Source: Octopus sinensis (Eukaryota). Taken from it: DNA of 64,000 nt. The stretch covers positions 64,976,001-65,040,000 of the forward strand of contig NC_043010.1 in the NCBI RefSeq assembly GCF_006345805.1, read 5' to 3'. Within the stretch, counting starts at the first letter, position 1; every line of letters begins with the position of its first letter. Below are positions 861-64,000 of this stretch, piece by piece. The notes beneath the pieces are model-generated. The model saw only the letters and a program-made list of their open reading frames with translations, searched no databases and was not told the origin of the DNA. The translations under genes were made by a program, and so were the position numbers.

Positions 861-978
861 AGCATGATTAAATGTTTTATTAGTGCTGCTACTAAGTTAG
901 TCATGGCCAGGGTTTATTCTGACCGAAAGTCATTTAAGTATCTAAGTACCCGCATACCCTGAACAAATATGTACTTAC

Positions 979-1122
979 CATATGTTTGCTTGTCACACTT
1001 CTTTCCATGCCATCCATCTTCGCAGCCATATTTACAGATTCCAGTAATTTGGTGACAATATTCCGCTCCAGAACAATGACATTCATTGATACAGTCTTTA
1101 CCATACAATTGTGGTGGACATC
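979..1122 (-). CDS. Gene 2 EGF-like exon
   Basis: caatttag|...G|gtaagt, 144 nt, phase 1-1, CPPQLYGKDCINECHCSGAEYCHQITGICKYGCEDGWHGKKCDKQTY, 8 Cys. Confidence 0.92.
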
Positions 1123-1815
1123 CTAAATTGATAACATCGAAACAGTTTCTTTGTAAATGAGCATTAAAATAAAACAGTTATTGAATATAACATTCAATCT
1201 TACAAGATCTCACATATAATCAACAAGAGATTCTATGTTTCAAGAGTATCTCTTGATATAGAATCTCTTGATGTAGCTAACAAGAGATACTATATATCAT
1301 ATTTACAATCTTAAAATTGCAGAAATTCGCGCACATATAAGAAATCAAAAATTATGCGATTCCTGTACATGTAGAAGCTACATAAGCTACAGTTGAGACA
1401 CTAGCGTATCCAGAGTGTGTGCCTCCCAGGGCGGCCCTTCCGTTTGCCACCCCGTACCTCTCAAAAGCACATATTGCCTATAGTAGACTCAAAAGTGATG
1501 CCACTTTAAAAGTACCGCTATTGGTGGACCACCCCTACCGCCCCCCAAACGTAGCTACGCTAATGAATTAAGAGCACTTTAAAGCATTATAGCCGAGAAG
1601 AGAGACTTGGCTGGCTGGGCTGGCATCCCAACATCCCCCTGAACAGAACACCAGTTTGCCGAAGGTTTATCCATTTACAGCTGAGTGAACTGGGATAACG
1701 TCAAAGAAGAATTTTACTCTAGAACTCAACGCATCACTGGTCCGAGAATTGAAACACCGATTTTACAATCATGGATGCAACACCCTAACCACCAGAACTT
1801 TCATCTCTCTCTCTA

Positions 1816-12380: not shown

Positions 12381-13546
12381 CAAATAATTGTCGTATAAAT
12401 AAATAACAAAAACGCTCTTATGTATGTGTATAAGCATGTATGTATGTTTCGCAGAATATTACGAGACTGAAAACAGCATCGCACTCCAGTATCTGCCTTG
12501 GCATGCATCCTATGATTGGTTGTCCCACTTTGTACCAAGCAATTTATAATGTACTGGGTTCTTTTTTTGGGTGGGGATACAGTATTGAGGGATGTGGTTT
12601 CTGTCAGATGCTCAGAGGTATGATAACGGACAGGCACGAGTGTCTTGATGTAAGAGAGATATTTTGCTACCCCTAATGAAAACGAAGGAAGAAATTAGGG
12701 GTTATCCTCAAGGAACAAGTAAGAATAGAGAAAGAAATTCAGAAAGTGTAGGCAAGTAATGGTAAGTTAGCAACTCTGTGAAAAGAGAATGACAAATGGT
12801 TAGTGATGGAGACAGAGGTGGATCCGGTGAGTGTGGAAAACGTGCAAGCATCGTCAAGGCTGAATATCAGTTGGGGGGGGGGATGAAGGGATTAGGAGAG
12901 GATGAGTGAAGAAAAGGAGGAGGAGAAGATAAGTGATAGAACAAAGTAAAGATGGTGGAAAGCAATAGTATAATGAAACCGGGGATAGATGAGATGTAGG
13001 GTGGTTTTATGATGTATGGGGATTTTCGGAATCGGAGTCTAGCGGGAAATAGGGATGGAAATTGCGTATATGTGCGTTTGTGTGTGTTATGTATATATGG
13101 GTGTATGTGATGTCGCGTGCGTGTGTATATTTCAAGAATGTGTTAAATATTATTTGTCAGTATACAATAATAGTGTAACATCTTTTCGTTTATAGGAATT
13201 AAACTGTTGTTTTAAGGAAACAAGATTATTAATGTTATGCTGTTCTGCATATCTCAAACTGTCTTATATTAATAAAGTCTAAAAGGGGTTCCAATTTTTA
13301 TATATTTCTTACATATTCATGCCTTAATATCATTGCGCTTCTTGGTTAAACTTCGTCAATCAGAATTTAAATGTTGGGAAAGAAAGTCACGCTTTAAACA
13401 ATTGTACTTATTATCAGAAATGCGTAGCTGTATGTTCGGACAACTCACTTTGAATGAAATTCTAATTTAAATAGTGTATATCAGAATGTAATCTTCAGCA
13501 ATCCTGCTATTATTTTACTAAAATTTTTAACAATCATTTTACTTAC

Positions 13547-13698
13547 GCTTTTGACAATATGGCTTTTTAATCCAGGTAAGCATCCATTTTCACATTTACT
13601 AAGGATTTGGAACTGGCAGTCACTAAGGTGTTTACAGTTACATTGGTATTTCTGGTCTTTCCCAAACAAGCCAACATCACCATAACCTTTACAACTGT
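13547..13698 (-). pseudogene. Gene 2 N-terminal EGF-like exon with 1-bp deletion
   Basis: ttttcag|...C|gtaagt, 152 nt (153 would keep frame), SCKGYGDVGLFGKDQKYQCNCKHLSDCQFQILSKCENGCLPG. The terminal TAT TGT CAA AAG (YCQK) is one base out of frame. Confidence 0.75.
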
Positions 13699-14553
13699 CT
13701 GAAAACAAATAATATATCAACATTATTAAAACATTTCTTTGAATAATTCTCTTAATAAATAATATTGATTCGTTAATATTAGATAGTATTTAATTTATAA
13801 AAAAAGTTATATATTAAGATAGCGTTATGATTTATACACTGTAAAGAGCATTAGCAATCTCAGTGATGAGAAATAAACTAATCCGTATATTAACATCGGT
13901 TGGCAAACAGTTTGCTTCTACGCTGCTCCATTGTCTGCCCTGAACATTAATATATTATATATCGCATAATTTCGGTGTAAGACATACAATACAAATGATT
14001 AGTGATTAAAACAACATATTCTCAAGTTTATTTACGCATATATTTTCTTCACATCTATTGACACATTTTTAATGCCATTGTTGTTATTTAGCCATCACTC
14101 AGCATTCATTCCGTGGACCAATGATCAAAGATTTTACACCCATGTCTATCTTGTTTCCACTTTATCCAGTATGTTTCTTTCTCAGAACAATAGGGTATGA
14201 TTTTAGCAGGCCAACCAATGAGAAAATGGGTGTCTTTAACCATTGCAGACTTTCAGGTTTTTCATTTTTATCATATATCTTGAATTATTGAAGTTTGTGA
14301 GTCCTTCCATTTGGTATATTTTCTCATTGAAAAGCCGCTGGGAGATACCTAGTAGTACTGGGATAATTTAAAGATATAACATTCATAGAAGAGAATAATA
14401 CACGCATATAGTTTTAAAGTTTTGTTGAGAACTTGACATTGCAGAAAACAACTTGTCAAATTTTACTGCGTGGAGAATAAATCTTTCACAACGTTCAAAA
14501 CTGAGGTCCATTATAAATTTTATAATCTAAAATACACACTTATATTCATAAGC

Positions 14554-14613
<60 letters not shown>

Positions 14614-14643
14614 ATATATATATTTAATTTATTTTATAGAAGG

Positions 14644-14694
14644 AGCTTCTACAGGACTAGAACTGTTTCATTCAAAAGAAATCATCAGGAAGCT
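14644..14694 (-). ncRNA. Type I hammerhead ribozyme (Penelope pLTR-associated)
   Basis: Minus strand: AGCTTC-CTGATGA-TTTC tttt GAAT-GAAA-CAG ttctagtc CTG-TA-GAAGCT. Stem I 6 bp, intact core, stem III closed, only a U-U mismatch at the base of stem II. Confidence 0.75.
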
Positions 14695-14889
14695 AGGTGA
14701 CAAGAGTAGTTTTGGCATTTATACATTTAGGCAGGTTTCAAAGGGGTGGTGGTGGGGGACTTTTTGGGGTAGACATGGCGCAAACTATCATTCTTAGGGG
14801 AGTGGTCAAAGGAATCGGTGGTAAAGTAGATAAAAGAATAAATAAAAGAATAAATAGAAAAATAGAGTTTTAGGTAAATAAGGAGACTC

Positions 14890-15330
14890 TCACTTATACA
14901 TATACATATATATATATATGTACATACACACACACATATATATATATATATATACACACACATGTACATATACACATACACACACACACACATACACATA
15001 TGTATACATATACATACATACATATACACACATATACATACATACACATATACATATATACACATACACATACGTACACATACACACATACACCCATATA
15101 CACATGTACATATGTACCCGTATACATGTATCTACGTACACGCCCATACCCATACTCATACATACACTTATATATGTCTACACACATATATATATAAAAG
15201 GGGATATACACCCCATACACACGCGCTCCCATATCCATATATATATATATATATATATATACATACACATATATATACACACACCCATATACACACATAT
15301 ATATACATACATACACATACATACCTATCC

Positions 15331-15387
<57 letters not shown>

Positions 15388-15860
15388 TATATATACACAC
15401 ACTCACATACATATGCATATACATGCACACACATACACACACATTTCTTCCCTTATTTTAATTTTATTTTAATTTTTTACTTTTGTTTTTATTTTTATTT
15501 TTATCTTGACCTCGGCCAGCCAGCCCGGCACTGAAGTGATGTCGTCCCAAGGGAACTAGTCTAAAGAGTCCATTTATTGCCCCTCTGCCTTCCTTTCTAT
15601 CTTTCTACTCACTGATACGAACACAAACACTCACACACGCACACACACTCACACGTACACTCATACACATTCACACACGCACATGTTATATTCATACATA
15701 CATACATACATCTACATACATGCACGTATATACACATACGTACACGTACCTACAAATTCATATCTACACGCATACACATACATACATCTATACACCCACA
15801 GAAGACTAGTCCATACATATACACAAATAAATATATATACATATACATATACACATACAT

Positions 15861-15901
<41 letters not shown>

Positions 15902-16890
15902 CACATATATACATATATATACTCATATATATATATATATACATATATATATACATACACATATATACATATATACACACATACATACACGTACGCGCAT
16001 ACCTACATATACATACACACATATATACTTACACCAGTCATATGCATACCTACATACCCATACATCCATATATCTATACATATACATACACGTATATATA
16101 CACACAAGCACATACTAATACACACGCACACACATCTAGCTACATATATAAAAAAGAAACCCAACAAGTCCATACATGTACACACATACACATACATACA
16201 TGCATATACACATATATACCCATACACATATACACATACATACACATACACATATATATATATACACACATGTATATATATACATATATACACATACATA
16301 TACATACACACATGCATACACATACACACACACACGCACATCTATATATACACATAAGTACATACATGCATAAATGTATACATATGTTTATACATATGCA
16401 CACACATACACACACACGCGCGCATCCTTATATACATAAATACATACATGCATACTCAAATAATAAATAATAAATAATAAATGTATATACATGCAGTTAC
16501 CCATTATACAGACGGATACATACATATAAACATACACATATATACCTATTTACACATATGTATATATACATACATGCATACCCATACACATAACTCTACA
16601 TACCTACATATACATAAACACACAAGCGTACACACATATATATATATACATATATACATATATATACATATATATATATATATATATCCACACACATACA
16701 TATACACATATACATACACACACACATACATATACACGCGCGTAAATACACGCACTCACATACATGCGTATATTCCTACTAACACCCATACGTTTCTATA
16801 CATATATACAAGTGTACACATACAATATGTGAATAGTCTTAGGAGAAAATATATATACATGAAACAAATGGAAAACAAGAGATACACCAT
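14890..16890. repeat. About 2 kb of cryptically simple (TA/CA) purine-pyrimidine sequence
   Basis: Interspersed TA, CA and TACA motifs; source of many spurious Y/I/H/T and V/C/M ORFs. Confidence 0.95.
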
Positions 16891-16948
16891 AGAGTGACCC
16901 TTCATCAGTTATCGGCCGTTTCTCTCTCTCTTTCTCACTCTATCTATC

Positions 16949-16990
<42 letters not shown>

Positions 16991-17189
16991 TAGCCGACAA
17001 CTGATGAAGGGTCGCTCTTTATGTTGTTTGTCTTGTTTTCCATTTGTTTCTTTTGTTGTCCGCAAAAAAGTTCATATTCCGTGTATTCGTATTTCGGATA
17101 TTTTGTTGTTTACGTTTTGTGACGTCCTGTGCCCACATATGTATATATATATATACATGTAAGTATTTATATATACGTATGTATATATG

Positions 17190-17246
<57 letters not shown>

Positions 17247-17366
17247 AGTATTTATATATACGTATGTATATATGCATCATATATATATATATACATATTA
17301 TTTATATTATAAGATTGAACACCACGCATCCTTTTCCAACTAAGTTTTATCTATCTATCTATATAC

Positions 17367-17416
<50 letters not shown>

Positions 17417-18297
17417 ATAACCAGTTTTTAGTGTTGCATCGAGCTGTACCGATATAATATAGGATAAATACAGTACCAATAGCAATAATGCGTGGATGAA
17501 ATTTATAAGCATTTAATACATCGCTACACACGCTTCCACAAATCACATGCCTCCTAAGACCGCCGTCCGTATTCCTGACACGATTACAGTGTAGTTCATG
17601 ATATTCGTGGACCTCGGGTAAATCACGTCCATGGATTCATTTCTTCAGGTGATATAACATTAATAGATGTTTAACAAAGGGCTGTTTATCCCTTTTAACC
17701 AGTACGAAGGTTCATTAATTTATGTGGCTATTTAGGTGTGTATTTGTGTGTGTGGAGGAGGGACGAAGTGCTGGAAAGAGAGGGAGGAACGGCAGTTATA
17801 TGGGGATGGCGGGTGTCTGGTGATGTTGGGCTGGTGATGTTGGGCTTATTTTGCTATTCCGTCTGTACATTCCTTTGTTCGATCTCATTTATGGCATCAC
17901 TATCTTCAATGAAGTCTGAAGTAAACAGGTCAGTCGTTACAGCCACTACAGCCATCAGCTGTTGGAGTTCGTTGCCCGAATTGATAAATAATTTTTTCTT
18001 AGAGTGACCTTTTATTTGTTTCTGCTATTACAGTTGTATATTGTTTAACATCCTAAACATTGGTTTCTTCTTTCCTTGTTCTCTAATATACTAAGGGTGG
18101 TTGATGTTATTTCGTTCCAAAATGCATTTTTCTTTCAAATTCAGAAACAATGTTTTGCGTCTATGTTTATCTGATGTGATCACCTCGGAGTGTCTATTTG
18201 TGTATTTATCACGTTTTTTCTGAGTGCAATGATTTCCTGAGTTTCTTCAAGGCATAAATTGCATCGGGACATCACCGGTGTGCAACTGTTACATGTG

Positions 18298-18359
<62 letters not shown>

Positions 18360-18792
18360 ATGATACAGGTGACATTCCCATCACTTAATGAAATTTAAGT
18401 AAATCAGAAAAAGAATAAAGTTTAGTATTGGGTATTTATCAGATGAATGCTATAAACAGGAACATGTTAACTATGTTAGCATCATCTGCTTTTTATAACA
18501 AAAGGCATCCATTTTGAAATATTTCAAAATTTTTATTTTTTCCATATTTAAAATTCATATTATTAGTTATATATTTTCTTAAAAGTATGTAGCCTTTGCT
18601 AAAACTTTCCTAATGACTTCTGCCTAAAATTGATTAATCATAGTTATCAATTAATACATATTTTCTCTTGCTCTAAGTCATTCTCTGTCTTCTTATAGAA
18701 TACGCATCGTGGTCCTCTTTGTCTTCTTTACTGTGATGGTAATTTACAGAACGGAATCAGTATTTCAAGCATGTGTGAACATGATCACATAC

Positions 18793-18880
18793 AGATAATT
18801 GCATATAATAGCACCCACAAAGCAATAAGAAACCGCACTCTATTGAAGGAATCTAAAACTATTACAAGATGATGGAACAT
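18793..18880 (-). CDS. Gene 2 putative first coding exon (signal peptide)
   Basis: ATG at 18880, MFHHLVIVLDSFNRVRFLIALWVLLYAII, then T|gtatgt (phase 1). Joins exon 13698 as ...AII-Y-SCKGYG. Confidence 0.45.
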
Positions 18881-19277
18881 GCAAAATATGAGAGTAAGAG
18901 CTGGATCATGCTATTCTATTAAATGATATAAAATAACACTAATACTACTAAACTTACCAGGTTTTCTGAAGCAAGTACTTTTACAATAATCAAGTTCCCT
19001 CTTATTATCTGCGACGCAATCTCCTTTGGTGATATCACATTGGGCTTTAATATAAATAAAAATAGAATTTTTATTTTTAAGAAACCATCAAGTGAGATAC
19101 CTTAGAAATCTAGTAGAATATGAAAATATCATATTCATGTCTTTCTCGGCAATAAAAATGACATAAATCAAAACATTTGTTAGTGAAAATAAAAATGAAG
19201 GGAAAGCTTTTCAGCGAAAATACAGACCGAAACTTTATTGCCGGGATCGTAATAATGTTATAATATTAAAAGGGTAA

Positions 19278-24284: not shown

Positions 24285-24384
24285 NNNNNNNNNNNNNNNN
24301 NNNNNNNNNNNNNNNNNNNNNNNNNNNNNNNNNNNNNNNNNNNNNNNNNNNNNNNNNNNNNNNNNNNNNNNNNNNNNNNNNNNN
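24285..24384. other. Assembly gap (100 N, true size unknown)
   Basis: Run of exactly 100 n. Confidence 1.
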
Positions 24385-28861: not shown

Positions 28862-29784
28862 TGTATGTATGTATGTATGTATGTATGTATATATGTATGC
28901 AATCTCAGATATGTAATATATTTGGTAGAGAAATGTAACGAAGAGAAATGTTCGCAATTAGAAGACAATAGCAACTAGTTGGAATGTAAAACAAACAAGA
29001 CACGTTATCCCAGTAAGGGCTAAACCATGATTTCGGAGAAGAGATCTAGCCAGTTCTACAGTTCAAATTATTGAAAATAATCTAATTTATTAAGTTTTAG
29101 TAACTGTATTGCGTATGTGATCCTTATATAAGAATTGAAATGGGGAAAGTACTTGTCTTTAAAGTACCAAAATTAGATTATTTGATACTATTAAGGTTAT
29201 CACCATTGCTTGTTTTCGATGTTCAACGCACGCAGAATTTTTTATTAATTGCTTGTATTGTATAATTTCATGGAAGTTTTACATGCATTAAATGCATGTA
29301 TGAGACGCTACCGTATGCAAACCCATTTATCTATCCGTATGTACATGTCTATAAATGTTATGTCCATTTAGATCCTGCAACTTGCTGGCACAATAAATAG
29401 TAGGCGGTAAAGTAAGCACCAGACACAAATAATTACTTATATTCTTCGTTAATATGTATAAAACGATACAGACTACTCCGGATGTAGTGTTGAATGTATG
29501 TTATATAAATAAATCAAGTGTAGAGTGGAGATGCATTTATTGTCAGAAACCAGTAAAAGTAGAAAGGGAAAAATATTTCTCCTTTCTCTGTTTATTTTAT
29601 CAATCAAATTTTATATGAGGCTACAAATTTTTCAATGGTCTTCCAGAATTTCATCATTCTTGTTAATGTTTCTCAAATAAAATCTAGAAATATTTCAATG
29701 AACGTTGATTTCACACTGCTACTATTTTAGTCCTTTTAAGAAACATCACTCTTATATAACATGAGATATTATGGAATGCCTTAC

Positions 29785-29907
29785 CTTCGAAATAGTAAAA
29801 CTTCGGTGTATATACGTTGAATGATACATAGTCTTGATATGTGAAATTTGGATTGTTCCAAATGACTCATTATTCTCTTCATCTGGCCAATACTGCATAC
29901 ACTTCAT
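29785..29907 (-). CDS. PTP domain exon 5
   Basis: tttgcag|...AAG|gtaagg, 123 nt, MKCMQYWPDEENNESFGTIQISHIKTMYHSTYIHRSFTISK, with the KCxxYWP motif. It lies inside track ORF 29752..30180. Confidence 0.95.
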
Positions 29908-30773
29908 CTGCAAAATATATACTTCTTTAATATGTTCATAATTAAACCAAAATAAAGAGTATGTCCATTCTATAATCAAACATTTCAAATTATTGAAAAT
30001 AAGCAAATTTATTGAATTTTTAGTAACTGTATTGCGTATGTGGTCCTTATATAAGAATTGAAATGTGGAAAGTACTTGAGTGTAAAGTGTTGTGTGTGAA
30101 CAATTAAATATGACGAAGTGATCATTAATGTAGGAAAAGGTCTGTTTAAAGTGTGTCCTGAACCCTTTAATATATGCCATATTTAAGAGTAGATGGGAAC
30201 TCTGGGCAAATGTTGATTTCTAATATGTAGGGGATCTAAACAGGTTTAAATAATTACAACTAATAAATATCTATTATTAAGTTTCTAAAGTGGCTCACAT
30301 AAACTGCGTTTTCATGAACACACAGTATATGTATCTCTTTAGAGATTTATTTTTTCCCTCATGAAGGAGGAGTGTCCAATAATAGATATAAATATTTTTT
30401 TATATGAATAGATAACCGGATCTCCAGAAACAGGCCATTTGATTATTGACTGGATTATTAATATCCAAACTTTCTTCTTTAGACTCTTAACTCTTTATGA
30501 TTTTTTTTATAATCTATAAGAAGATTTATACATGTAATTGTTTTTTCAATATATTATTAATGCATATTAATATATTTATATATTTTTATATGCATATTTT
30601 TAATGTATTGATTACTCTTTATAGTTTCATTATATTTATATACCTATATAATTTTAATATGTCTAATGAATTAAATATACTCTTAAAGAAATGCATTTAT
30701 GTTGGGTCTATTGCTGAATATATGTATATATGAACTTGATTTGCCTAACTTTGATTCATACTTTTATATTATA

Positions 30774-41667: not shown

Positions 41668-42860
41668 TCAGGCTGAGTAAAAAGTAAGCAACATTTTGAA
41701 ACATGAAATTCCTCACTATACATTTCAACAATGCGGAAGTACCATTACAATCAACACATTTTTGCCAATGAGTCACACGTTTGTTTATTCCAGTAACATA
41801 AAAATCTGGAGTTCAGGATCTAATGAAATATTTCAGCATCGTTTTGATTTTTGAATGCCTTCTCTCGCAGGAAACCATCAAGGTGTTTGAAAAAGTCATA
41901 GTCAGTAGGACAAAAATCTGGGGAATAAGCTGGGTGTGGAAGAATTTTGTAGCCAAGTTCCCTCAATTTCTGAAGTGTCATTAGTGAAACGTACGGTCGA
42001 GCATTGTTATGAAGAATGATCAGCCCTTTTTTGTTGCCCCGTCTGAGACAGAAGAGTAGCAGTTTTCCGTTCATTTTGGTAATTTCATGGCAAGTTGTTT
42101 CTACAGTAATGGTTTTTCCGGGTTTGAAGAAGTTATATTGGATGAGTCCAGCAGTACACCACCAAACAGTCACCATGACCTGTTTGAAGAGATCGGGATT
42201 ATGGAAAGTTTCCGGTGCTTCATTTTGGTCCAACTACTGCGAAGAACATTTTCTTTTATTGCACAGAATCCACTCTACACCGCAAGTTAGAAAACGGTCG
42301 AGAAACAGATCGGTCACGTTAGGTAGGAGAGGTGACGAGCAAATTTCCTATCTGAGCATCTTCTGATTTTCATTCAAATTGTGTGCTACCCATTTGTTGA
42401 GCCTTTTTGATGCTTTGATCGCACTTGCAGGCAGTTTTCTGGCTAGCCTGAAGTTCTTTTCCCAGTTTTCGAGTGGTTTTACGTGGATCTTACTCAATAA
42501 CGATCTTTAATTGACCGTCATCGATAACAGATGAGCGTCCACAACGTTCGCGATCTGCAAGGCCATTTTGGAGCAGACCAATCACAGGTCATTTCTTAAC
42601 CAAATGTTTCGTTGATATTGCGAGCTGTTTTAGCTGCTTTACGCCCTTTTTTGTAGTTGAAAAGCAAAATTTCTCGAATATCGCGCTTTGACAGTTCCAT
42701 TTCAGATGATTGTAACAACAGTGAAAAAATATCAATATTAATTTATTGATGCATTTGGGCAATTCTATTATCAAACAATTGGTAAAAAAATAAAACTCTT
42801 CAAACATCCGGCACAAATTCTTCATGGTTCAAAACGTTGATTACTTTTTACTCAACCTGA
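41668..42860 (-). mobile_element. Near full-length degenerate mariner
   Basis: Imperfect TIRs tcaggctgagtaaaaagtaagcaac / gttgattactttttactcaacctga with TA; ILHNNARPY and PHPAYSPDFCPTDYDFF. Confidence 0.92.
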
Positions 42861-48059: not shown

Positions 48060-49480
48060 TAAGGATCTATCCAACTACTCGCCTGGGCAACTTTGTTATC
48101 TTGGTAATATGCACATGGAATGTTGCATCATTATTAATTTGGATTCCTAGATAATGCACCGATTCTAACTCCGGAATTGCACTATCGCCTGGTCCTATGT
48201 ATTCCGATTGTAGTCTCTTTATGGGCCAATAATGCTTGAAACTTATGAGCATTGAGCTGCATGTTATTTTTAGCAGCCCATTTTTATATTGCCTGCAAGT
48301 TGTTTTGCAGCTTTTGCATGTTATCATGGCCCTGGACCACCTGAAATACTTTTGTATTATCGGCGTAACTGGTGTGAGCTGCTGACTGTACGACAATGGG
48401 GGGGAGGCATATCTGAGGGAGCCACTACAAACATTGGTGGTCCCAGCACAGTTCTTTGAGGAACTCCACTGCGAATTGATACCACCCCAGAGAAAGCATC
48501 ATTGACTACAACAACCTGACTTCTGTCTTTTAAAAAGTCGTACAGCCACTCTCCCAGTTTTCTAGTGATAACAAGATCAAGTAGTCTGTGATATATCATC
48601 CCATGATTAGCGTTGTCAAAGGCTTTAGGAAAGTTGGGATATATCACATCGGCTTTTGAGTGGTTTTCAGTACGCAATAATAATATTATAGTAGTTGTGT
48701 GAGGTATGTTTTTCAGCAAGTTATTCTCTTCCAAGGAGGTGATCAATCTCTTTCTGACAATGCGTTCCATGACCTTATGCGATGTAAGAGAGATAGGCCT
48801 GTGATTTTTAGCACTTGCTTTCCTTCCTTCATTATATTATAGCCTCTTTTAACAGTCTGGTAGGTTTTCCACATGCAAGGATACTCTGAGAAATTATCTG
48901 CTATGATTTGCGAAAGCTTTCTTACATATTTTCAGGAGAACATCCAGAAATCCATCAGGACCAGTTGCTGAGTTTGAGCTCATCTCAACAATAGCTGTAG
49001 TATTACATCTATCTCTATTGTATCGATGTAATCGATGGCTGGCTTTTCATATTGGTCTGTAAGCTGGCTTACTTTCCTGTTTCCCAGTGGAGAGGTGAAG
49101 ACATTGTGATATTGCTTATTTAGTACTTCACTTATCTTCTTGGAGTCTGCTGTTAGCAAGCCGACTTCTCTAAAAAATGGGCCTATCTTCTAGTGCACTG
49201 TGGCAGATTCTTTCGCTAACTTGTAGAAGGCTTTAGAATTTATTTTTATATTTTCTTCCGCAATGTTTTCTCATCCTATCCTTTCATTTTCATGGGTGAC
49301 TCTGGGTTTATTTTCGATTTCTAATAGTCTCTCTTTGAGGAGGCATTTTTCGCTGTCATTAAGATTTATTTTATATCTCATAAGAACTTTCCTGTCTCGC
49401 GAATGATGCTTATGTATGTGGTCGCTCTCTTCTCTGGGACAAATTGAGTGCAAATGATTCACATTACTGACATAAATTCT
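48060..49480 (-). mobile_element. CR1/L2-like LINE RT fragment
   Basis: MERIVRKRL..LEENNLL, DVIYPNFPKAFD, DFLKDRSQVVVVN, SGVPQRTVLGP and LGIQINND. Confidence 0.85.
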
Positions 49481-53831: not shown

Positions 53832-53847
53832 AAATAAAAATTCTAAT

Positions 53848-54423
53848 GCCCTTATTTTGTATATTATTTATAAATTTAACCTTTAAAGGTATTTTTTGAT
53901 ATGCTGGCCATTGATAAAATTTTTTTTCTCGAAAAAAATTTTATCCTATTATTAGTTATAAATTTAATAGTGTTCACTTCCGGATTCGCTCATTCTGTGA
54001 AAATTTCTAGTTCGAATCACACGTACTCGAGATGTGCCGAAGATTTTCTATTTTGGATATATTTGGGGTTCTTAGGTCAGCTCGGGACTTGGTGCTTGCT
54101 TTTTCCATGGGTATGAGTAAGTATTTCATTTATATCTCACGTATTTATCGCTGAAGAGGGGAAAATTCTTATGAATTAACCCCGAAATTGGGACCAATAC
54201 GGTAATAACGGGTTTTTTAGAAAATTCTATCGGTTTGTTTCAAGACTCATAAATTATAATGGTTATTGACAATTTTGTCTTTTTTTCGGCATATTTGGCA
54301 GTAGAATTTTTGTTTTGCCCTTATTTTGTAAATTATTTATAAATTTAACCTTTAAAGGTATTTTTTGATATGCTGGCCATTGATAAAATGTTTTTCTGAA
54401 AAAAATGTTATCCTACATTAGTT
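53848..54423 (+). repeat. Direct repeat (about 108 bp, period 469 nt) enclosing a hammerhead: Penelope pLTR partial tandem or retrozyme-like unit
   Basis: 53848-53957 and 54317-54423 are near-identical (gcccttattttgta...ttatcct..ttagtt), bounded by (GT)n/(TATG)n and (TA)n. Confidence 0.75.
54145..54205 (+). ncRNA. Type I hammerhead ribozyme
   Basis: TTATCG-CTGAAGA-GGGG(loop with AATTC/GAATT hairpin)CCCC-GAAA-TTG ggac CAA-TA-CGGTAA. All three stems pair; predicted cleavage after A54199. Confidence 0.85.
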
Positions 54424-54669
54424 ATATATATATATATAAGGGAGAATTCACAAGAAAAAACAAAAGACGAAGACATATGGTGTAGACAACAAGCAGATGC
54501 AATAGTTTAATGCTTGGGAAGTGAAAAAGCTTTAATGTTTCGAGCATTCGCTCTTCCACAGAAAGGAACACAGAAAGAAACAAGGAGAGAATAAAGAATG
54601 TATAGTGGCTAGCAATCAATCATGGCGAATGCCGGACAGATATATATATATATGTATATATATATATAA

Positions 54670-57899: not shown

Positions 57900-58560
57900 A
57901 CGTGTTACATTCTGAGTAACAGTTGCTGAAGTCTTTTTAAATCAACACTCCTTGGTCGGATGATCCTTTGGGCCTTCCGTCGTCTCCAACTAGATCCCAC
58001 CACCCACCCCATTTCCCCAACACACCCCTGTCGTCCTTTAAATGCGCCGTAACCTACGCGATCTACTAGTCTGTAGCACCCTCCTCTCTTACCTCCCAAC
58101 CCCATTCGGATGCTTCCCTTACTCTAGATTCTGCTGCTACACTTGCCCTTTCATCAGCAACACCACCTCCCTCACTGGATTCAACCAGCAAACCCTCCAC
58201 ATTAGAAACTCCCCTTGCACTTCTTCAAGTCTTATCTATTGCATTAGAGATAATCTCTGCAATAAACTCTACGTTGGTCAGACGGACTGCTGCCTGGCCG
58301 ACCGGTTCACGGAACATCTACGAGATATTCGGCTACGCACGAACATTCCCGTCGCCCGTCATTTCCGTTTGGCCAACCACTTCACCTCTTATATCTCCAT
58401 TTTTGGCCTCGCCTTGCACCACAGATCCACACTCTCGACTCCGCCTGGAACAGCGTTATATTTTCAGTCAACAAACATAAACTCCCTTCGTACTCAGCAT
58501 AACCCCCTCCTCTTAACGACTGCCTCTAAACCCTTTTCTTTTATTTTATTTTATCTTCTC
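57900..58560 (+). mobile_element. Penelope-like GIY-YIG endonuclease domain
   Basis: CTSSSLIYCIRDNLCNKLYVGQTDCCLADRFTEHLRDIR..PVARHF. Confidence 0.85.
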
Positions 58561-58859
58561 TCATAACCATTTACTTCTTTGCACTGTTACCTATTTTACG
58601 ATTTTTTATTGTTTTTTATCGTTTTTTCTGTCGAATTAAAAAAATTTATTGTATTATTTTTTATAATTTTTAAAATTTCTATTTCATTAATTTAATTTTG
58701 TTTAAATTTTAATTTTTTTACTTTTTATTCTTTACTTTTTATTTTTTATCTTATATCTGTTATTTTTGAATTTTTAAAAATTTTTTTAATTTTTTCATCT
58801 TGTAACCTTCTCCATTTTTGCCCCTTTTTTACCGACCTTCTTTATCATATTTTATTTTA

Positions 58860-60170
58860 TTTCTATATACACGCACACATACATTCACACACGTACATAT
58901 GCACACACATGCACACATATACGCACGCGCACAGGCATGAACTCACATATACCTCACATATATAACCCACACACACACCATACACATACACACAACACAC
59001 ATACATGCACACATATACACACATGCAGGTACACACACATACACACATATACACACATGCACTTACACACGCACACATGCGCATACACACACACACCCAC
59101 GGACGCATACACGAACGCAAATATAACTCCACACACACGACTCCATGCACATACTCACATATACACACACCCATACACACGCATACATAAGCACACATAC
59201 GCGCACATACACGCACGCGCACAGACATGAATACACATGCACCACACATATATATCATACACACACAACATGCACATACAAGCACACAAGCAATGTACAC
59301 ATATACACATACACACACGCACACACACACACAGGCACAGGCACACACATACAAACACACGCACATACATATACACACATCACACACACAACCCCACGTA
59401 CACACGTACACACATATACACACTCACACAGACGCTCATACAAATACATACGCACACACATACAAACACACGCACATACATATACACACACCACACACAC
59501 AACCCCACGTACACACGCACACACATATACACATGCACACACACATATACACACTCACACACACACGCACATACTAATACATACGCACCCACATACACAC
59601 ACACGCACATGAACGCACACACACCTCCCATTCACACAACACAATCATACAAACACGCTCACAATTACACATACAACGACATGCACACACGCACATACAC
59701 ACGCACACGCACACACTCATATACAGGAATGCACATATTACTCCACACACACAAAGCCACGCACATGCATATACACACGAACATACACATACGCACATAC
59801 ACATATGTACACACACGCACGCACACGCACACACACACACAAGACACACACACATCATACACACACAGCATATACATAGACACACACACAGCATATACAT
59901 AGACGCACACATACATACACATGCACACAATACTTCAAACTGCCTCCCAAACACATTTCTACTGACCATTCCTCTACGCACATGTGAAGAGACACATAAC
60001 TCCACAAAGGTCCACCACTCCTGTTACCATGCTACTGAATTTTTCCAACTTTAAGAGACAAAGTTCACTCACACATCCACATATAAACATCCAAGACCAC
60101 ACAAACTCCACACACACACGCATACACACACATACCATTACACCCACACCCACACGCAGACTAGCGCACA
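58860..60170. repeat. About 1.3 kb CA-rich cryptically simple repeat with higher-order units
   Basis: (CA)/(TACA)/(CGCA) mosaic; a unit of about 78 bp recurs near 59343 and 59455. Confidence 0.95.
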
Positions 60171-60301: not shown

Positions 60302-60336
60302 GTTTCTGAAGAAGAGCGTCGCTCGAAACGTAGAAC
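60302..60336 (+). ncRNA. Minimal (palindromic stem III) hammerhead ribozyme of a Penelope pLTR
   Basis: GTTT-CTGAAGA-A-GAGC gtc GCTC-GAAA-CG-TA-GAAC, with an ACGT palindrome at stem III as in PLE minimal hammerheads. Confidence 0.65.
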
Positions 60337-60439
60337 CACTTTACTTTCCTTCCCTTGAGCATCTGCTAATACTTTGCATGTATCACTCCTTGCGTTGTTG
60401 TTTTTTCTTTCTTGTGTTTGATCTTCGTGGTTTTGGATT

Positions 60440-60880: not shown

Positions 60881-61080
60881 GATCCAAACAAGAAAGCAAA
60901 AAAAACACAACAACGCGAGGACGTGGAACAAATATAGTATTATAGGACGCTCAGGAAAGAAGGAAAGAAGGAGGGTTCAACGTTACGAGCGGAGCTCTCC
61001 GTCGGAAACATAGAAGGAAAGATCCAGAGAAGGGAAGACAAAGGAAAAAAAATCGCCAACGGTACACACGCGGTCACATT

Positions 61081-61153: not shown

Positions 61154-61725
61154 TTGGGTCATTCCATAAATAATGCGGTTTTTTTCAATCGCATGAACTA
61201 AAAGTTGAAATAGGATGGGATAAACTACCTGCATCAACCTGCTATGAAAGCAGATAGTAATTTTCCCTCTTCCTTAATCTTAGGGCAAGTTTTGAAGGGT
61301 GAAGCTCGATTTAAACAGTTATTTTTTCAAAGCTATAATGGAAGTGACAAATGAGCACGTTCGGCATAGTTTGTTTTATTATGAGTTCAACAAAGGCAAC
61401 AAAGAAACGGAAAGTGCGAGGGATATTAATGCAGTGTTTGGGGATTGGACAATAAGTGTAAGCCAGTATCAACGGCGGTTCCAGAAGTTCCGAGCCGGAA
61501 ACAACAACCTAGAAGACGAGCCACATCTTGGAAGATCTGTAGAGCTCGAGAAAGATGTCTTGCAAACTCTGGCGGAACAAAATCCCATCGTAACTGTTGA
61601 GGAACTAGTACAGCAGCTTGGTTTTGGTCATTCAAGATGGAAAAGTATTGTAGAAAATTTTAGATCAAAAAAGTACTTTATCTTAATCTTTTAAAAAATG
61701 AGGGTTAAAAAACCGCATTATTTAT
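61154..61725 (+). mobile_element. Internally deleted mariner
   Basis: TIR ataaataatgcggtttttt / aaaaaaccgcattatttat; MEVTNEHVRHSLFYYEFNKG...FQKFRAGNNNLEDEPHLGRS. Confidence 0.85.
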
Positions 61726-63435: not shown

Positions 63436-63676
63436 CTGAAAATATTGGTATAAACAAATTATATTAGATATCATTTACTGAATATAATAAAAGGTATATC
63501 TATAATACTTTTCTACTTCAGAAATATAATTAAGATATTGTATGCCTGTAAACAAACATTAAACATTTGTTTCGCTTAACGTAATATGTTATCATAAACA
63601 AGATTGAACAGGTAGAGACATTAATTGAAATATAAAAAATAATTTAATAATTTTGGAATAAAGTATAGAAAATTAC

Positions 63677-63805
63677 CTTCTTGACAGCTGGATCCGCTGT
63701 ATCCTGCATCACAATCACCTGGACATGATCCATGTACGTGGTTACATGGTAGGGAACAATGACAATGCTTTTTGCAACCCTCACCAAAGCTGAATCTGGA
63801 GTATT
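63677..63805 (-). pseudogene. EGF-like exon A' with damaged splice acceptor (probable decayed or skipped exon)
   Basis: 129 nt, EYSRFSFGEGCKKHCHCSLPCNHVHGSCPGDCDAGYSGSSCQE, donor G|gtaatt. Same length as the paralogous exon 53178-53306, but the acceptor reads cgg instead of cag, the first Cys is Tyr, and (TA)n replaces the pyrimidine tract. Confidence 0.7.
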
Positions 63806-63811
63806 CCGTAT

Positions 63812-63866
<55 letters not shown>

Positions 63867-64000
63867 GTGTGTGTGTGTGTGTGTGTGTATGCTCCTACGT
63901 GATTTTGCATGTGCAGAAATGCAGATGCACACACATGCACACGTTATGTCACTGAAATACATTTATTCACAGTTGTATGGATACCTATCCATCCATGCAT

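What the first reader, a model, noticed from the sequence alone, without database searches (positions are those of the whole stretch)
14644..14694. Near-perfect hammerhead ribozyme in sense orientation inside gene 2's first intron
Seen: a full type I fold on the minus strand, the same strand as gene 2, between the putative signal-peptide exon and exon 13698. Known: Penelope-like elements carry hammerheads in their pLTRs. Inference: self-cleavage after position 14650 could sever the pre-mRNA and lower expression, or is tolerated because gene 2 is already dead.
Basis: partly seen in the sequence, partly recalled or inferred. Interest (0 to 1): 0.7.

Follow-up and report, generated by a model that had tools for sequence, protein, structure and literature searches.

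The report
Weak hammerhead-like motif in octopus repeat
A 51-base look-alike of the hammerhead self-cutting RNA does sit in an intron of a small octopus gene, but it is part of a short retroelement-derived repeat with a nearly unpaired second stem, so it is most likely an ordinary weak or dead relic and not a regulator of the gene.

Summary
The motif is real and is at the stated coordinates, on the minus strand at 14694..14644. It has all 11 core bases, an A15.1-U16.1 pair, a GUA cleavage triplet (cut 14650|14649), a 6-bp helix I and a 4-bp helix III.

"Near-perfect" overstates it:
- Helix II is three weak pairs on a U.U mismatch (-0.1 kcal/mol).
- Nothing can form the loop-loop contact.
- The best Rfam hammerhead score is 14.8 bits against a threshold of 48.5.
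- The hammerhead fold takes 5% of the ensemble alone and 0.2% in its 165-nt context, where a 3' hairpin (-6.3 kcal/mol) buries the cleavage site.

The window is Octopus DNA, 96-99% identical to O. sinensis. The motif lies in sense in a 5259-nt GT-AG intron of the LOC115219451 ortholog. That is intron 2 of the NCBI model, not intron 1.

The motif is part of a ~165-bp dispersed repeat. A paralogous copy exists with an identical motif. The repeat sits in (TA)n and has an inverted 3'-terminal fragment, both Penelope-like insertion hallmarks. The window also holds Penelope remnants and two more hammerhead-like motifs.

Best reading: a retroelement-borne hammerhead relic carried as a passenger in the intron. 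It is ordinary and of low interest.

The parts
14644..14694 (-). Hammerhead-like motif, type I topology (51 nt)
   Evidence: Read directly from the sequence. Found by my descriptor. Identical in the O. sinensis ortholog and in a paralogous copy.
14689..14694 (-). Helix I, 5' strand AGCUUC; pairs with 14649-14644
   Evidence: Six Watson-Crick pairs, pair probabilities 0.72-0.99. The flanking bases cannot extend the helix.
14682..14688 (-). Core box CUGAUGA (C3-A9)
14670..14681 (-). Helix II and loop 2: UUUC-UUUU-GAAU, a U.U mismatch at 10.1/11.1 plus 3 pairs
   Evidence: -0.1 kcal/mol on its own. Pair probabilities 0.13-0.18.
14667..14669 (-). Core box GAA (G12-A14)
14651..14666 (-). Helix III (ACAG/CUGU, including A15.1-U16.1) with the 8-nt loop UUCUAGUC, which has a central CUAG palindrome
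   Evidence: -2.4 kcal/mol. Pair probabilities 0.30-0.35.
14649..14650 (-). Predicted scissile bond, 3' of A17 (14650) and 5' of G1.1 (14649)
   Evidence: Position counted. It lies 951 nt upstream of exon 3.
14635..14653 (-). Competing 3' hairpin UGUAGAAG-CUC-CUUCUAUA; it sequesters the helix I 3' strand and the cleavage site
   Evidence: -6.3 kcal/mol. It is part of the MFE structure of the 165-nt element.
14622..14786 (-). Dispersed repeat unit of ~165 bp that carries the motif at its positions 93-143, followed by the hairpin and an A/T tail
   Evidence: Ortholog L001 31923-32085, 98% identical. Paralog L001 1243..1082, 94.5% identical, with the same 5' and 3' limits.
14557..14621 (.). (TA)n microsatellite abutting the 3' end of the repeat
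   Evidence: The paralog is flanked by (TA)n on both sides.
14787..14895 (-). ~110-bp A/T-rich stretch between the upstream (TA/TG)n tract and the shared repeat. It may be a variable 5' part of the insertion unit.
   Evidence: It is not shared with the paralog.
13699..18957 (-). Host intron (5259 nt, GT-AG) of the LOC115219451 ortholog. Much of it is TA/TG/CA microsatellite.
   Evidence: tblastn of P0002 and the splice-site reading.
18958..19044 (-). Exon 2 of gene 2 (QCDITKGDCVADNKRELDYCKSTCFRKP)
13542..13698 (-). Exon 3 (the last exon) of gene 2. It has a 1-nt deletion near 13571 relative to O. sinensis.

Best explanation
The 51-nt motif is the hammerhead module of a short (~165 bp) retroelement-derived repeat, most likely a Penelope-type (PLE or PLE-mobilised) insertion. 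The repeat landed in a (TA)n microsatellite inside intron 2 of the octopus LOC115219451 ortholog before this octopus and O. sinensis diverged.

Because the repeat is in the gene's sense orientation, every pre-mRNA contains the motif. In principle the RNA can pair AGCUUC with GAAGCU (helix I), form helix III, and cut 3' of A14650 by the usual in-line 2'-OH attack.

Four features make this copy at best a slow, rarely folded ribozyme:
- Helix II is almost unpaired (a U.U base plus three weak pairs).
- There is no loop 1 / loop 2 contact.
- There is no tandem partner for a dimer.
- A stronger downstream hairpin captures the helix I 3' strand.

The copy is therefore a passenger in the intron and has no appreciable effect on the gene.

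Shown: the sequence anatomy, repeat membership, the insertion hallmarks, the intron position and the thermodynamics. Inferred: the Penelope origin, the low activity and the lack of effect on the gene.
For: 1. The core and helices I and III are intact. A hit this good occurs in 0.5% of shuffled windows.
2. The motif is part of a repeat. A paralogous copy in O. sinensis (L001 1243..1082) is 94.5% identical, has the same ends and carries an identical motif.
3. The insertion anatomy matches what is published for PLEs. There is (TA)n on the flanks. An inverted copy of the last ~36 nt (hairpin plus tail) lies head-to-head at the paralog's 5' end. The hammerhead is near the 3' end, followed by a stem-loop and an A/T tail. 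The papers describe (TA)n targets, inverted 5'-truncated copies and 30-40-bp tails (PMC8557442), and reverse-transcription initiation in a stem-loop with extension of both strands (PMC11167929).
4. PLEs are present in the window.
   - ORF 58042-58563 has the GIY-YIG motif with two internal cysteines (Pfam 18.7 bits, below the 22.6 cut-off; its one homologue is P0003).
   - A PLE-type minimal hammerhead family is at 60306-60340.
   - A second full hammerhead-like motif is at 54145-54205. Chance gives a hit as good as that one in 0.25% of shuffles.
5. All three motifs lie upstream of a (TA)n run, at 34, 218 and 103 nt.
6. None of 9 internal substitution or indel events among the three sequences fall in the 51-nt motif. 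That is P about 0.03 by my arithmetic.
7. A U.U mismatch at the base of helix II has a natural precedent. Axolotl HHR_Amex2 has ~60,000 copies and shows 22% self-cleavage in 1 h (PMC7229834).
8. Low activity is expected. Helix II is worth -0.1 kcal/mol, the fold takes 5% and 0.2% of the ensemble, and the competing hairpin is worth -6.3 kcal/mol.
Against: - No copy was found joined to a PLE reading frame, so the Penelope origin rests on insertion hallmarks only.
- Only two independent copies could be obtained, and no variation falls in the helices, so there is no covariation test.
- Rfam hammerhead models score 14.8 bits against a threshold of 48.5. However, they also miss the two other motifs in the window completely, so this result is weakly informative.
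- A stem-loop plus a simple-repeat tail is also typical of some LINE/SINE 3' ends.
Confidence: 0.55

Rival explanations
1. Fortuitous look-alike. The repeat is the 3' end of some other retroposon (a SINE or LINE tail with a hairpin and a simple-repeat tail), and its CUGAUGA...GAAA arrangement with flanking complementarity arose by chance and was then copied along with the element. It has never been a ribozyme.
For: - Helix II has no stability and there is no G10.1-C11.1 pair.
- The MFE structure is not the hammerhead and the z-score is 0.04.
- Rfam scores are sub-threshold.
- No covariation is available.
- At 0.5% per 64-kb window, a genome of a few Gb would hold hundreds of chance hits (plus my knowledge of genome size). 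One chance hit in a repeat progenitor is then multiplied by transposition.
- A LINE with an APE-type endonuclease and RT lies in L001 3131-5682, so non-PLE retroelements are plentiful here.
Against: - Two independent motifs of this quality in one 64-kb window is very unlikely under the shuffle null (0.005 x 0.0025).
- The 11/11 core, the A15.1-U16.1 pair and an allowed H17 sit exactly between two good helices.
- The position near the 3' end of an element lodged in (TA)n, with an inverted terminal fragment, is the published PLE layout.
- The motif is the least variable part of the repeat.
Confidence: 0.3
2. One reading: an active intronic hammerhead that cuts the gene 2 pre-mRNA 951 nt upstream of exon 3 and so lowers or tunes expression, comparable to the conserved intronic hammerheads of amniote genes.
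For: - The motif is in sense orientation inside a canonical GT-AG intron.
- The core is intact.
- Helix I can form during transcription before the competing downstream strand has been made (inference).
- The motif is identical in O. sinensis.
- Intronic hammerheads are a known phenomenon (PMC6155905).
Against: - Identity with O. sinensis carries no weight, because the neutral flanks are 96-99% identical as well.
- The same motif occurs in a paralogous copy outside the gene, so it came with the repeat.
- The hammerhead fold is a minor conformer.
- There are no tertiary contacts and no dimer partner within the window.
- Animal retrozymes are reported to be depleted from introns, which suggests that active ones are selected against there (bioRxiv 10.64898/2026.07.22.740005 abstract).
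Confidence: 0.05
3. A C/D-box snoRNA-like element hosted in the intron. The terminal stem AGCUU/AAGCU and the UGAUGA box would be a C box, not a hammerhead core.
For: - The best Rfam match over exactly 14644-14694 is SNORD102 at 19.3 bits, E 0.32 in a 67-nt search.
- Intronic location in sense orientation is typical for snoRNAs.
Against: - The score is far below the gathering score of 47 and is not significant at window scale.
- There is no D box: the sequence reads CUGU where CUGA is needed.
- There are no C'/D' boxes.
- 51 nt is too short for a eukaryotic C/D snoRNA with a guide (my knowledge).
- The sequence is a dispersed repeat.
Confidence: 0.03

Closest known systems
[quoted passage not shown]
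   Same: - Type I topology.
- Carried near the 3' end of a retroelement-type repeat.
- Mostly found as solitary truncated copies scattered through metazoan genomes.
- Insertion into (TA)n, with an inverted terminal fragment and a tail.
- Low intrinsic activity is expected.
   Different: [quoted passage not shown]
- This motif has none of the first three. It has a 6-bp helix I and a 4-bp helix III with an 8-nt loop.
- No RT/GIY-YIG reading frame is attached to either copy.
Metazoan non-LTR retrozymes with type I hammerheads (Cervera and de la Pena 2020, PMC7229834), in particular axolotl HHR_Amex2
   Same: - A short (150-450 bp), A/T-rich, non-coding repeat carrying one type I hammerhead.
- HHR_Amex2 also has a U.U mismatch at the base of helix II and a more stable helix III, and still self-cleaves weakly (22% in 1 h).
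   Different: - Retrozymes occur as head-to-tail tandem arrays and have loop 1 / loop 2 contacts.
- This element is a single copy at both loci, and helix I has no loop or bulge.
- Helix II here is shorter and weaker.
'HHR_core' motifs in 3' UTRs of Naiad PLEs (Craig et al. 2021, PMC8557442)
   Same: - CUGANGA, then a 7-17-nt spacer (12 nt here), then GAAA, without a canonical stem/loop fit.
- Naiads prefer (TA)n targets.
- Naiads are present in Octopus only as old remnants.
   Different: - Here helices I and III fit a standard descriptor.
- No link to a Naiad sequence could be tested, because the paper's supplementary consensus sequences are not held.
Conserved intronic hammerheads of amniotes (RECK, CTCL, DTNB; Rfam HH9/HH10)
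   Same: A type I motif in sense orientation inside an intron of a protein-coding gene.
   Different: - Those are canonical, with stable helices and tertiary contacts. They are conserved at the orthologous site over hundreds of millions of years and are detected by Rfam models.
- None of this holds here.
Schistosoma Sm-alpha SINE-like hammerhead repeats
   Same: A short dispersed retroposon-like repeat whose transcript contains a type I hammerhead.
   Different: - Sm-alpha hammerheads are canonical and fast, with a defined loop-loop contact.
- The element is tRNA-related and transcribed by pol III. No A or B boxes are seen here.

Membership tests
Hammerhead ribozyme (type I) | Conserved core C3 U4 G5 A6 N7 G8 A9 and G12 A13 A14 | tested here: met
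   CUGAUGA at 14688-14682 and GAA at 14669-14667.
Hammerhead ribozyme (type I) | A15.1-U16.1 pair and a non-G nucleotide at position 17 before the scissile bond | tested here: met
   A14666-U14651, A17 = 14650, cleavage triplet GUA.
Hammerhead ribozyme (type I) | Three helices around the core, with helix I open | tested here: inconclusive
   Helix I is 6 bp (-3.4 kcal/mol) and helix III is 4 bp (-2.4). Helix II is only 3 weak pairs (-0.1). All three together hold 5% of the ensemble, or 0.2% in the 165-nt context.
Hammerhead ribozyme (type I) | G10.1-C11.1 pair closing helix II | tested here: not met
   U14681 opposite U14670. The precedent for U.U is axolotl HHR_Amex2.
Hammerhead ribozyme (type I) | Loop 1 / loop 2 (or bulge) tertiary contact that gives activity at physiological Mg2+ | tested here: not met
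   Helix I is a plain 6-bp duplex and the flanks cannot extend it. Loop 2 is UUUU.
Hammerhead ribozyme (type I) | Score at or above the gathering threshold of an Rfam hammerhead covariance model | tested here: not met
   No match at gathering. The best is Hammerhead_3 at 14.8 bits against 48.5. The models also miss the two other motifs in the window.
Hammerhead ribozyme (type I) | Covariation in the helices with an invariant core across relatives | tested here: inconclusive
   Three sequences (two independent copies) have zero changes in the motif and 9 internal events elsewhere. There are no compensatory pairs to count.
Hammerhead ribozyme (type I) | Site-specific Mg2+-dependent self-cleavage | not testable with these tools
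   Needs in vitro transcription or RNA end mapping.
Penelope-like element hammerhead (pLTR / 3'-terminal) | Lies in the repeat flanking an RT plus GIY-YIG reading frame | tested here: not met
   No coding remnant lies next to either copy. The PLE GIY-YIG fragment in the window is 43 kb away, and its 3' UTR is unrelated.
Penelope-like element hammerhead (pLTR / 3'-terminal) | PLE insertion signature: microsatellite (TA)n target, an inverted 5'-truncated copy at the 5' side, and a 30-40-bp tail | tested here: met
   (TA)n on the flanks. An inverted copy of the terminal ~36 nt is at L001 1248-1283, next to the paralog. The criteria are from PMC8557442.
Penelope-like element hammerhead (pLTR / 3'-terminal) | min-HHR hallmarks: a nucleotide between 9 and 10.1, G10.1-C11.1, and palindromic 15.2-16.2 / loop 3 | tested here: not met
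   The first two are absent. Only a central CUAG palindrome in loop 3 is present. The criteria are from PMC4209133. The motif at 60306-60340 does meet them.
Metazoan non-LTR retrozyme | Head-to-tail tandem copies of a 150-450-bp unit, each with a type I hammerhead | tested here: not met
   No second copy anywhere in the window. The two O. sinensis copies are 31 kb apart on opposite strands.
C/D-box snoRNA | C box RUGAUGA and D box CUGA brought together by a terminal stem; Rfam score at or above threshold | tested here: not met
   A C-box-like UGAUGA and a terminal stem are present, but the D-box position reads CUGU. SNORD102 scores 19.3 bits against 47.
Conserved intronic hammerhead (amniote HH9/HH10 type) | Conservation at the orthologous intron across distant taxa, beyond the neutral level | not testable with these tools
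   Only O. sinensis was obtainable (96-99% identical throughout). No more distant cephalopod DNA could be fetched.

The most novel reading that the evidence does not exclude
The 165-bp unit is the first seen member of a cephalopod family of non-autonomous, Penelope-mobilised elements. Its hammerhead is of an unusual monomer type, with a 4-bp helix III, a U.U-based mini helix II and no loop-loop contact. It would still cleave, perhaps with help from the PLE protein as reported for the anole element. Sense-oriented intronic copies such as this one would then measurably cut host pre-mRNAs.
Probability: 0.12. Interest if true: 0.45.

Novelty: new member of a known kind. Interest (0 to 1): 0.2.

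Why it matters
Hammerhead motifs carried by Penelope-like elements and retrozymes are already known to be scattered by the thousand through invertebrate and lower-vertebrate genomes. One more degenerate copy in an octopus intron changes little. I found no paper describing hammerheads in cephalopods.

The value here is mainly annotation. The motif should be labelled as part of a repeat, not as a regulatory ribozyme of LOC115219451.

If the family turned out to be active, it would add a natural example of a hammerhead that works with an almost absent helix II. It would also give a way to test whether sense-oriented intronic ribozyme insertions are costly to host genes.

Tried and rejected
1. More copies of the repeat.
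   - A protein-database search with the only fully open (antisense) reading frame of the element found nothing.
   - Two scans of metagenome contigs, one with the exact motif and one with helix II left free, found nothing.
   - Look-ups of window ORFs 14697-14873(+) and 13481-13723(-) found no record.
   - No collection of eukaryotic genome DNA is searchable here, so the census stopped at 135 kb of octopus DNA (window, L001, L002).
2. PLE link through proteins. The GIY-YIG ORF found one homologue (P0003, Logan contigs L003 and L004). Its 3' UTR is A/T-rich and unrelated to the element.
3. The supplementary consensus sequences of the Naiad/PLE paper are not held.
4. Similarity between the three hammerhead-bearing units of the window: none outside the core.
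5. snoRNA reading: rejected, because there is no D box, the RNA is too short and the score is sub-threshold.
6. MITE reading: rejected, because the unit has no terminal inverted repeats at its two ends.
7. tRNA-SINE reading: no A or B boxes, and Rfam found nothing in 14500-14850.
8. Alternative registers for helix II, treating the first U as the PLE-type extra nucleotide. Each leaves an unpaired U before G12, so they were rejected.
9. The Rfam negative as an argument against a hammerhead was down-weighted after calibration. The PLE-type motif at 60306 and the motif at 54145 get no hammerhead hit at all.

Full report
WHAT THE SEQUENCE SHOWS

The minus strand from 14694 to 14644 reads AGCUUC CUGAUGA UUUC UUUU GAAU GAA ACAG UUCUAGUC CUGU A GAAGCU. 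In hammerhead numbering this gives:
- helix I of six Watson-Crick pairs (14694-14689 with 14649-14644), left open, hence type I
- the core box C3-A9
- helix II with loop 2
- G12-A14
- helix III of four pairs including A15.1-U16.1, with an 8-nt loop
- A17 at 14650

The weak point is helix II. Positions 10.1 and 11.1 are U opposite U, and only U-A, U-A and C-G follow, closed by UUUU.

IS IT MORE THAN CHANCE?

I wrote a descriptor after seeing the motif. It requires CUGANGA, helix II of at least 3 bp with one mismatch allowed at its base, GAAA, helix III of at least 3 bp ending in U, a non-G at position 17, and helix I of at least 4 bp.
- It finds two hits in the window: this one and an unrelated one at 54145-54205 on the plus strand.
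- Dinucleotide-preserving shuffles of the window give 0.06 hits per window.
- A hit with helices as good as the candidate's occurs in 0.5% of 2000 shuffles, and one as good as the second hit in 0.25%.
- In 71 kb of further octopus DNA the descriptor hits only copies of the same element.

At the scale of one window the motif is not a chance product, and two such motifs in 64 kb is very unlikely under the null. At genome scale (about 2.7 Gb, my knowledge) the same rate would still give a few hundred chance hits, so the descriptor alone does not prove a ribozyme.

HOW GOOD A HAMMERHEAD IS IT?

- Rfam gives no match in the window at gathering thresholds and no hammerhead family at E up to 10 in 14500-14850.
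- In a 67-nt search the best clan member is a partial Hammerhead_3 alignment of 14.8 bits (gathering 48.5, E 0.48). There is no Hammerhead_1 match.
- The minimum-free-energy fold of the 51-mer is not the hammerhead, and the sequence folds no better than its shuffles (z = 0.04).
- The hammerhead structure costs only 0.3 kcal/mol more than the MFE, but it holds just 5% of the ensemble.
- On their own, helix I is worth -3.4, helix III -2.4 and helix II -0.1 kcal/mol.
- In the 165-nt repeat the hammerhead helices drop to 0.2%. Bases 14653-14635 form an 8-bp hairpin (UGUAGAAG-CUC-CUUCUAUA, -6.3 kcal/mol) that takes up the 3' strand of helix I and the scissile bond.
- Helix I has no internal loop and cannot be extended, so the loop 1 / loop 2 contact that gives natural hammerheads their activity at cellular Mg2+ has nothing to form from.

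'Near-perfect' is therefore too strong.

Two caveats work in the motif's favour. First, the Rfam models also fail completely on the two other hammerhead-like motifs of the window, one of which belongs to a clear PLE-type family, so the Rfam negative is weakly informative. Second, a U.U mismatch at the base of helix II is the rule in the ~60,000 HHR_Amex2 copies of the axolotl, which still self-cleave 22% in one hour (PMC7229834).

WHERE IT SITS

Translated exons identify the region as Octopus. The exon starting at 13698 is 96% identical to O. sinensis LOC115219451, a 107-residue uncharacterised protein (P0002). Its locus (L001, GCA_006345805.1 CM016872.1) aligns to window 24282-8410 at 96-99% identity in reverse orientation.

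The NCBI model has three exons. In the window:
- exon 2 is 19044-18958 (minus strand), ending in G|GTAAGT
- exon 3 starts at 13698 after UUUGUUUUCAG
- the intron is therefore 18957-13699, 5259 nt, GT-AG

The motif lies in this intron, in sense, 951 nt upstream of exon 3. The intron is the second of the model. The signal-peptide exon (MPTGNVIVFYFGILLIPSIKQIFTL) is not in the window. Synteny with O. sinensis stops at a 100-N gap at 24285-24384.

Relative to O. sinensis, the window has a 1-nt deletion in exon 3 (GGATTTAAAAAG becomes GGATTAAAAAG, near 13571). This replaces the last ~11 residues, including a cysteine, with 34 others. Whether this is a real lesion or a homopolymer error cannot be told.

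IT IS PART OF A REPEAT

The motif is 100% identical in the O. sinensis ortholog. That means little, because the flanks are equally conserved.

The more telling result is a second, paralogous copy 31 kb away on the other strand, at L001 1243..1082. It is 94.5% identical over 163 bp, begins at the same TTTGCGCC and ends at the same ...CUUCUAUAAAAUAAAU tail running into (TA)n.

The unit is about 165 bp. The motif occupies positions 93-143, followed by the hairpin and an A/T tail. No other copy is in the window.

Among the three sequences there are nine internal substitution or indel events, and none falls in the 51-nt motif. By my arithmetic, (105/156)^9 is about 0.03. This is a modest hint that the 3' part is the constrained part of the source element. 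Because no helix position varies, covariation cannot be tested.

WHAT KIND OF REPEAT?

Both insertion units, each about 270 bp, lie between microsatellite tracts: (TA)n on both sides in the paralog, and (TA/TG)n upstream with (TA)n downstream in the window. Immediately 5' of the paralogous copy sits an inverted copy of the last ~36 nt (hairpin plus tail), head to head.

These are the features described for Penelope-like elements:
- a preference for (TA)n targets, an inverted 5'-truncated copy next to the 5' end, a 30-40-bp tail and hammerhead motifs near the 3' end (PMC8557442)
- reverse transcription that starts in a stem-loop internal to the 3' end, with both DNA strands cleaved and extended (PMC11167929)

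PLEs are present in the window:
- ORF 58042-58563 carries ...LIYCIRDNLCNKLYVGQT...RFTEHLRD..., the GIY-YIG motif with two internal cysteines. Pfam GIY-YIG scores 18.7 bits, just under its 22.6 cut-off.
- At 60306-60340 there is a motif with every hallmark listed for PLE minimal hammerheads (PMC4209133): CUGAAGA, an extra A before helix II, a GAGC/GCUC helix II closed by G10.1-C11.1, and the palindrome GAAACGU. It belongs to a family with decayed copies at 61068..60881 (inverted, 600 bp away) and in L002.

All three hammerhead-like motifs of the window lie upstream of a (TA)n run, at 34, 218 and 103 nt. Only 1.4%, 9% and 5% of positions do so at those distances (a post hoc comparison).

Against a PLE origin:
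- Neither copy touches an RT or endonuclease remnant.
- The 3' UTR of the PLE fragment family is unrelated.
- The motif itself lacks the extra nucleotide, the G10.1-C11.1 pair and the minimal helix III of PLE hammerheads.
- A hairpin plus a simple-repeat tail also occurs at LINE/SINE 3' ends.

MOST LIKELY MECHANISM

The reading I hold at about 0.55 is as follows. A retroelement-borne hammerhead module, probably of Penelope type, was inserted as a short unit into a (TA)n tract of the intron before the two octopus genomes diverged. It is now transcribed passively as part of the pre-mRNA.

During transcription, helix I can close before the competing CCUUCUA strand emerges, so a transient hammerhead fold is possible. 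With helix II nearly unpaired, no tertiary clamp and no tandem partner, I expect cleavage to be slow compared with the seconds to minutes between transcription of the site and removal of the intron. This is an inference from the general behaviour of minimal hammerheads and from the low activity of PLE hammerheads in vitro (PMC4209133). The effect on the gene should be negligible.

Rival readings:
- a chance look-alike amplified with an unrelated repeat (0.3)
- a C/D-box snoRNA-like element (0.03), suggested by a SNORD102 match of 19.3 bits over exactly these coordinates but lacking a D box

COMPARISON WITH WHAT IS KNOWN, AND VERDICT

The nearest known things are:
- PLE hammerheads
- the non-LTR retrozymes of animals, especially the U.U-bearing HHR_Amex2
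- the 'HHR_core' remnants in Naiad 3' UTRs
- by position only, the conserved intronic hammerheads of amniotes

The motif meets the core definition of a hammerhead but fails the G10.1-C11.1 pair, the tertiary contact and the covariance-model thresholds. It meets the PLE insertion signature but not the PLE motif hallmarks. It is not tandem, so it is not a retrozyme array.

A full-text search found no paper describing hammerheads in Octopus, so it is a new member of a well-known kind, and an ordinary one. The decisive steps are a whole-genome census of the 165-bp unit with a covariation test, an in vitro cleavage assay with dead and helix-II-repaired controls, and RNA end mapping at 14650|14649.

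Noticed in passing
window 54145-54205 (+), unit 53847-54432: A second, more canonical hammerhead-like motif: UUAUCG|CUGAAGA|GGGG...CCCC|GAA|AUUG-GGAC-CAAU|A^CGGUAA. It has a G10.1-C11.1 pair and a helix II that extends to ~9 bp. It lies inside a ~469-bp unit bounded by 120-bp direct repeats (53847-53966 and 54316-54432, 92.5% identical) between microsatellites. That layout is pLTR-like or retrozyme-like. A hit this good occurs in 0.25% of shuffles. Rfam gives no hammerhead hit, and the fold takes 2% of the ensemble.
   Followed up: partly
window 60306-60340 (+); related copies at window 61068..60881 (-) and L002 3622-3831: A PLE-type minimal hammerhead: CUGAAGA, an extra A, GAGC/GCUC helix II, the palindrome GAAACGU, then A^GAACC. 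It is followed 103 nt later by (TA)36. It belongs to a small family. The inverted neighbour 600 bp away and the L002 copy both have mutated cores.
   Followed up: partly
window 58042-58563 (+): A 5'-truncated Penelope-like element: an ORF with the GIY-YIG endonuclease motif and two internal cysteines (Pfam 18.7 bits, cut-off 22.6). It has one homologue in Logan contigs (P0003, 52% identity). No RT lies upstream. An A/T-rich 3' UTR and then a long (CA)n-rich tract (58863-60000) follow.
   Followed up: partly
window ~13571 (-), exon 3 of the LOC115219451 ortholog: A 1-nt deletion in a T/A run relative to O. sinensis shifts the frame for the last ~11 codons and lengthens the ORF by 23 residues. 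Either the gene is damaged in this genome or this is an assembly error.
   Followed up: partly
window 24285-24384: A 100-N scaffold gap. Collinearity with O. sinensis CM016872.1 ends exactly here. The signal-peptide exon of gene 2 and the paralogous repeat copy seen in O. sinensis upstream of the gene are not found anywhere in the window.
   Followed up: no
window 14900-17400 and many other places: The host intron and much of the window are dense TA/TG/CA microsatellite. There are 31 runs of (TA) of at least 8 units in 64 kb. These produce spurious long ORFs ([12 protein letters not shown]) and weak miRNA-like Rfam hits.
   Followed up: no
window 41820-42233 (-), 61299-61694 (+), 48357-48770 (-): Mariner/Mos1-type transposase fragments (Pfam Transposase_1 and HTH_48), plus an ORF that looks like a reverse-transcriptase fragment by eye but has no Pfam hit.
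   Followed up: partly
window 29752-30180 (-), 917-1177 (-), 63621-63962 (-): Host-gene exons. One is a protein-tyrosine-phosphatase domain piece (Pfam 19.6 bits, just under the cut-off). Two are cysteine-rich EGF-like exons, and the one at 917-1177 is 82% identical to O. sinensis LOC115227551 (P0001).
   Followed up: no
L001 3131-5682 (+): A non-LTR retrotransposon by eye (APE-type endonuclease and RT motifs; not run against Pfam), 2 kb from the paralogous repeat copy in O. sinensis. It is on the other strand and shares no sequence with the repeat.
   Followed up: no
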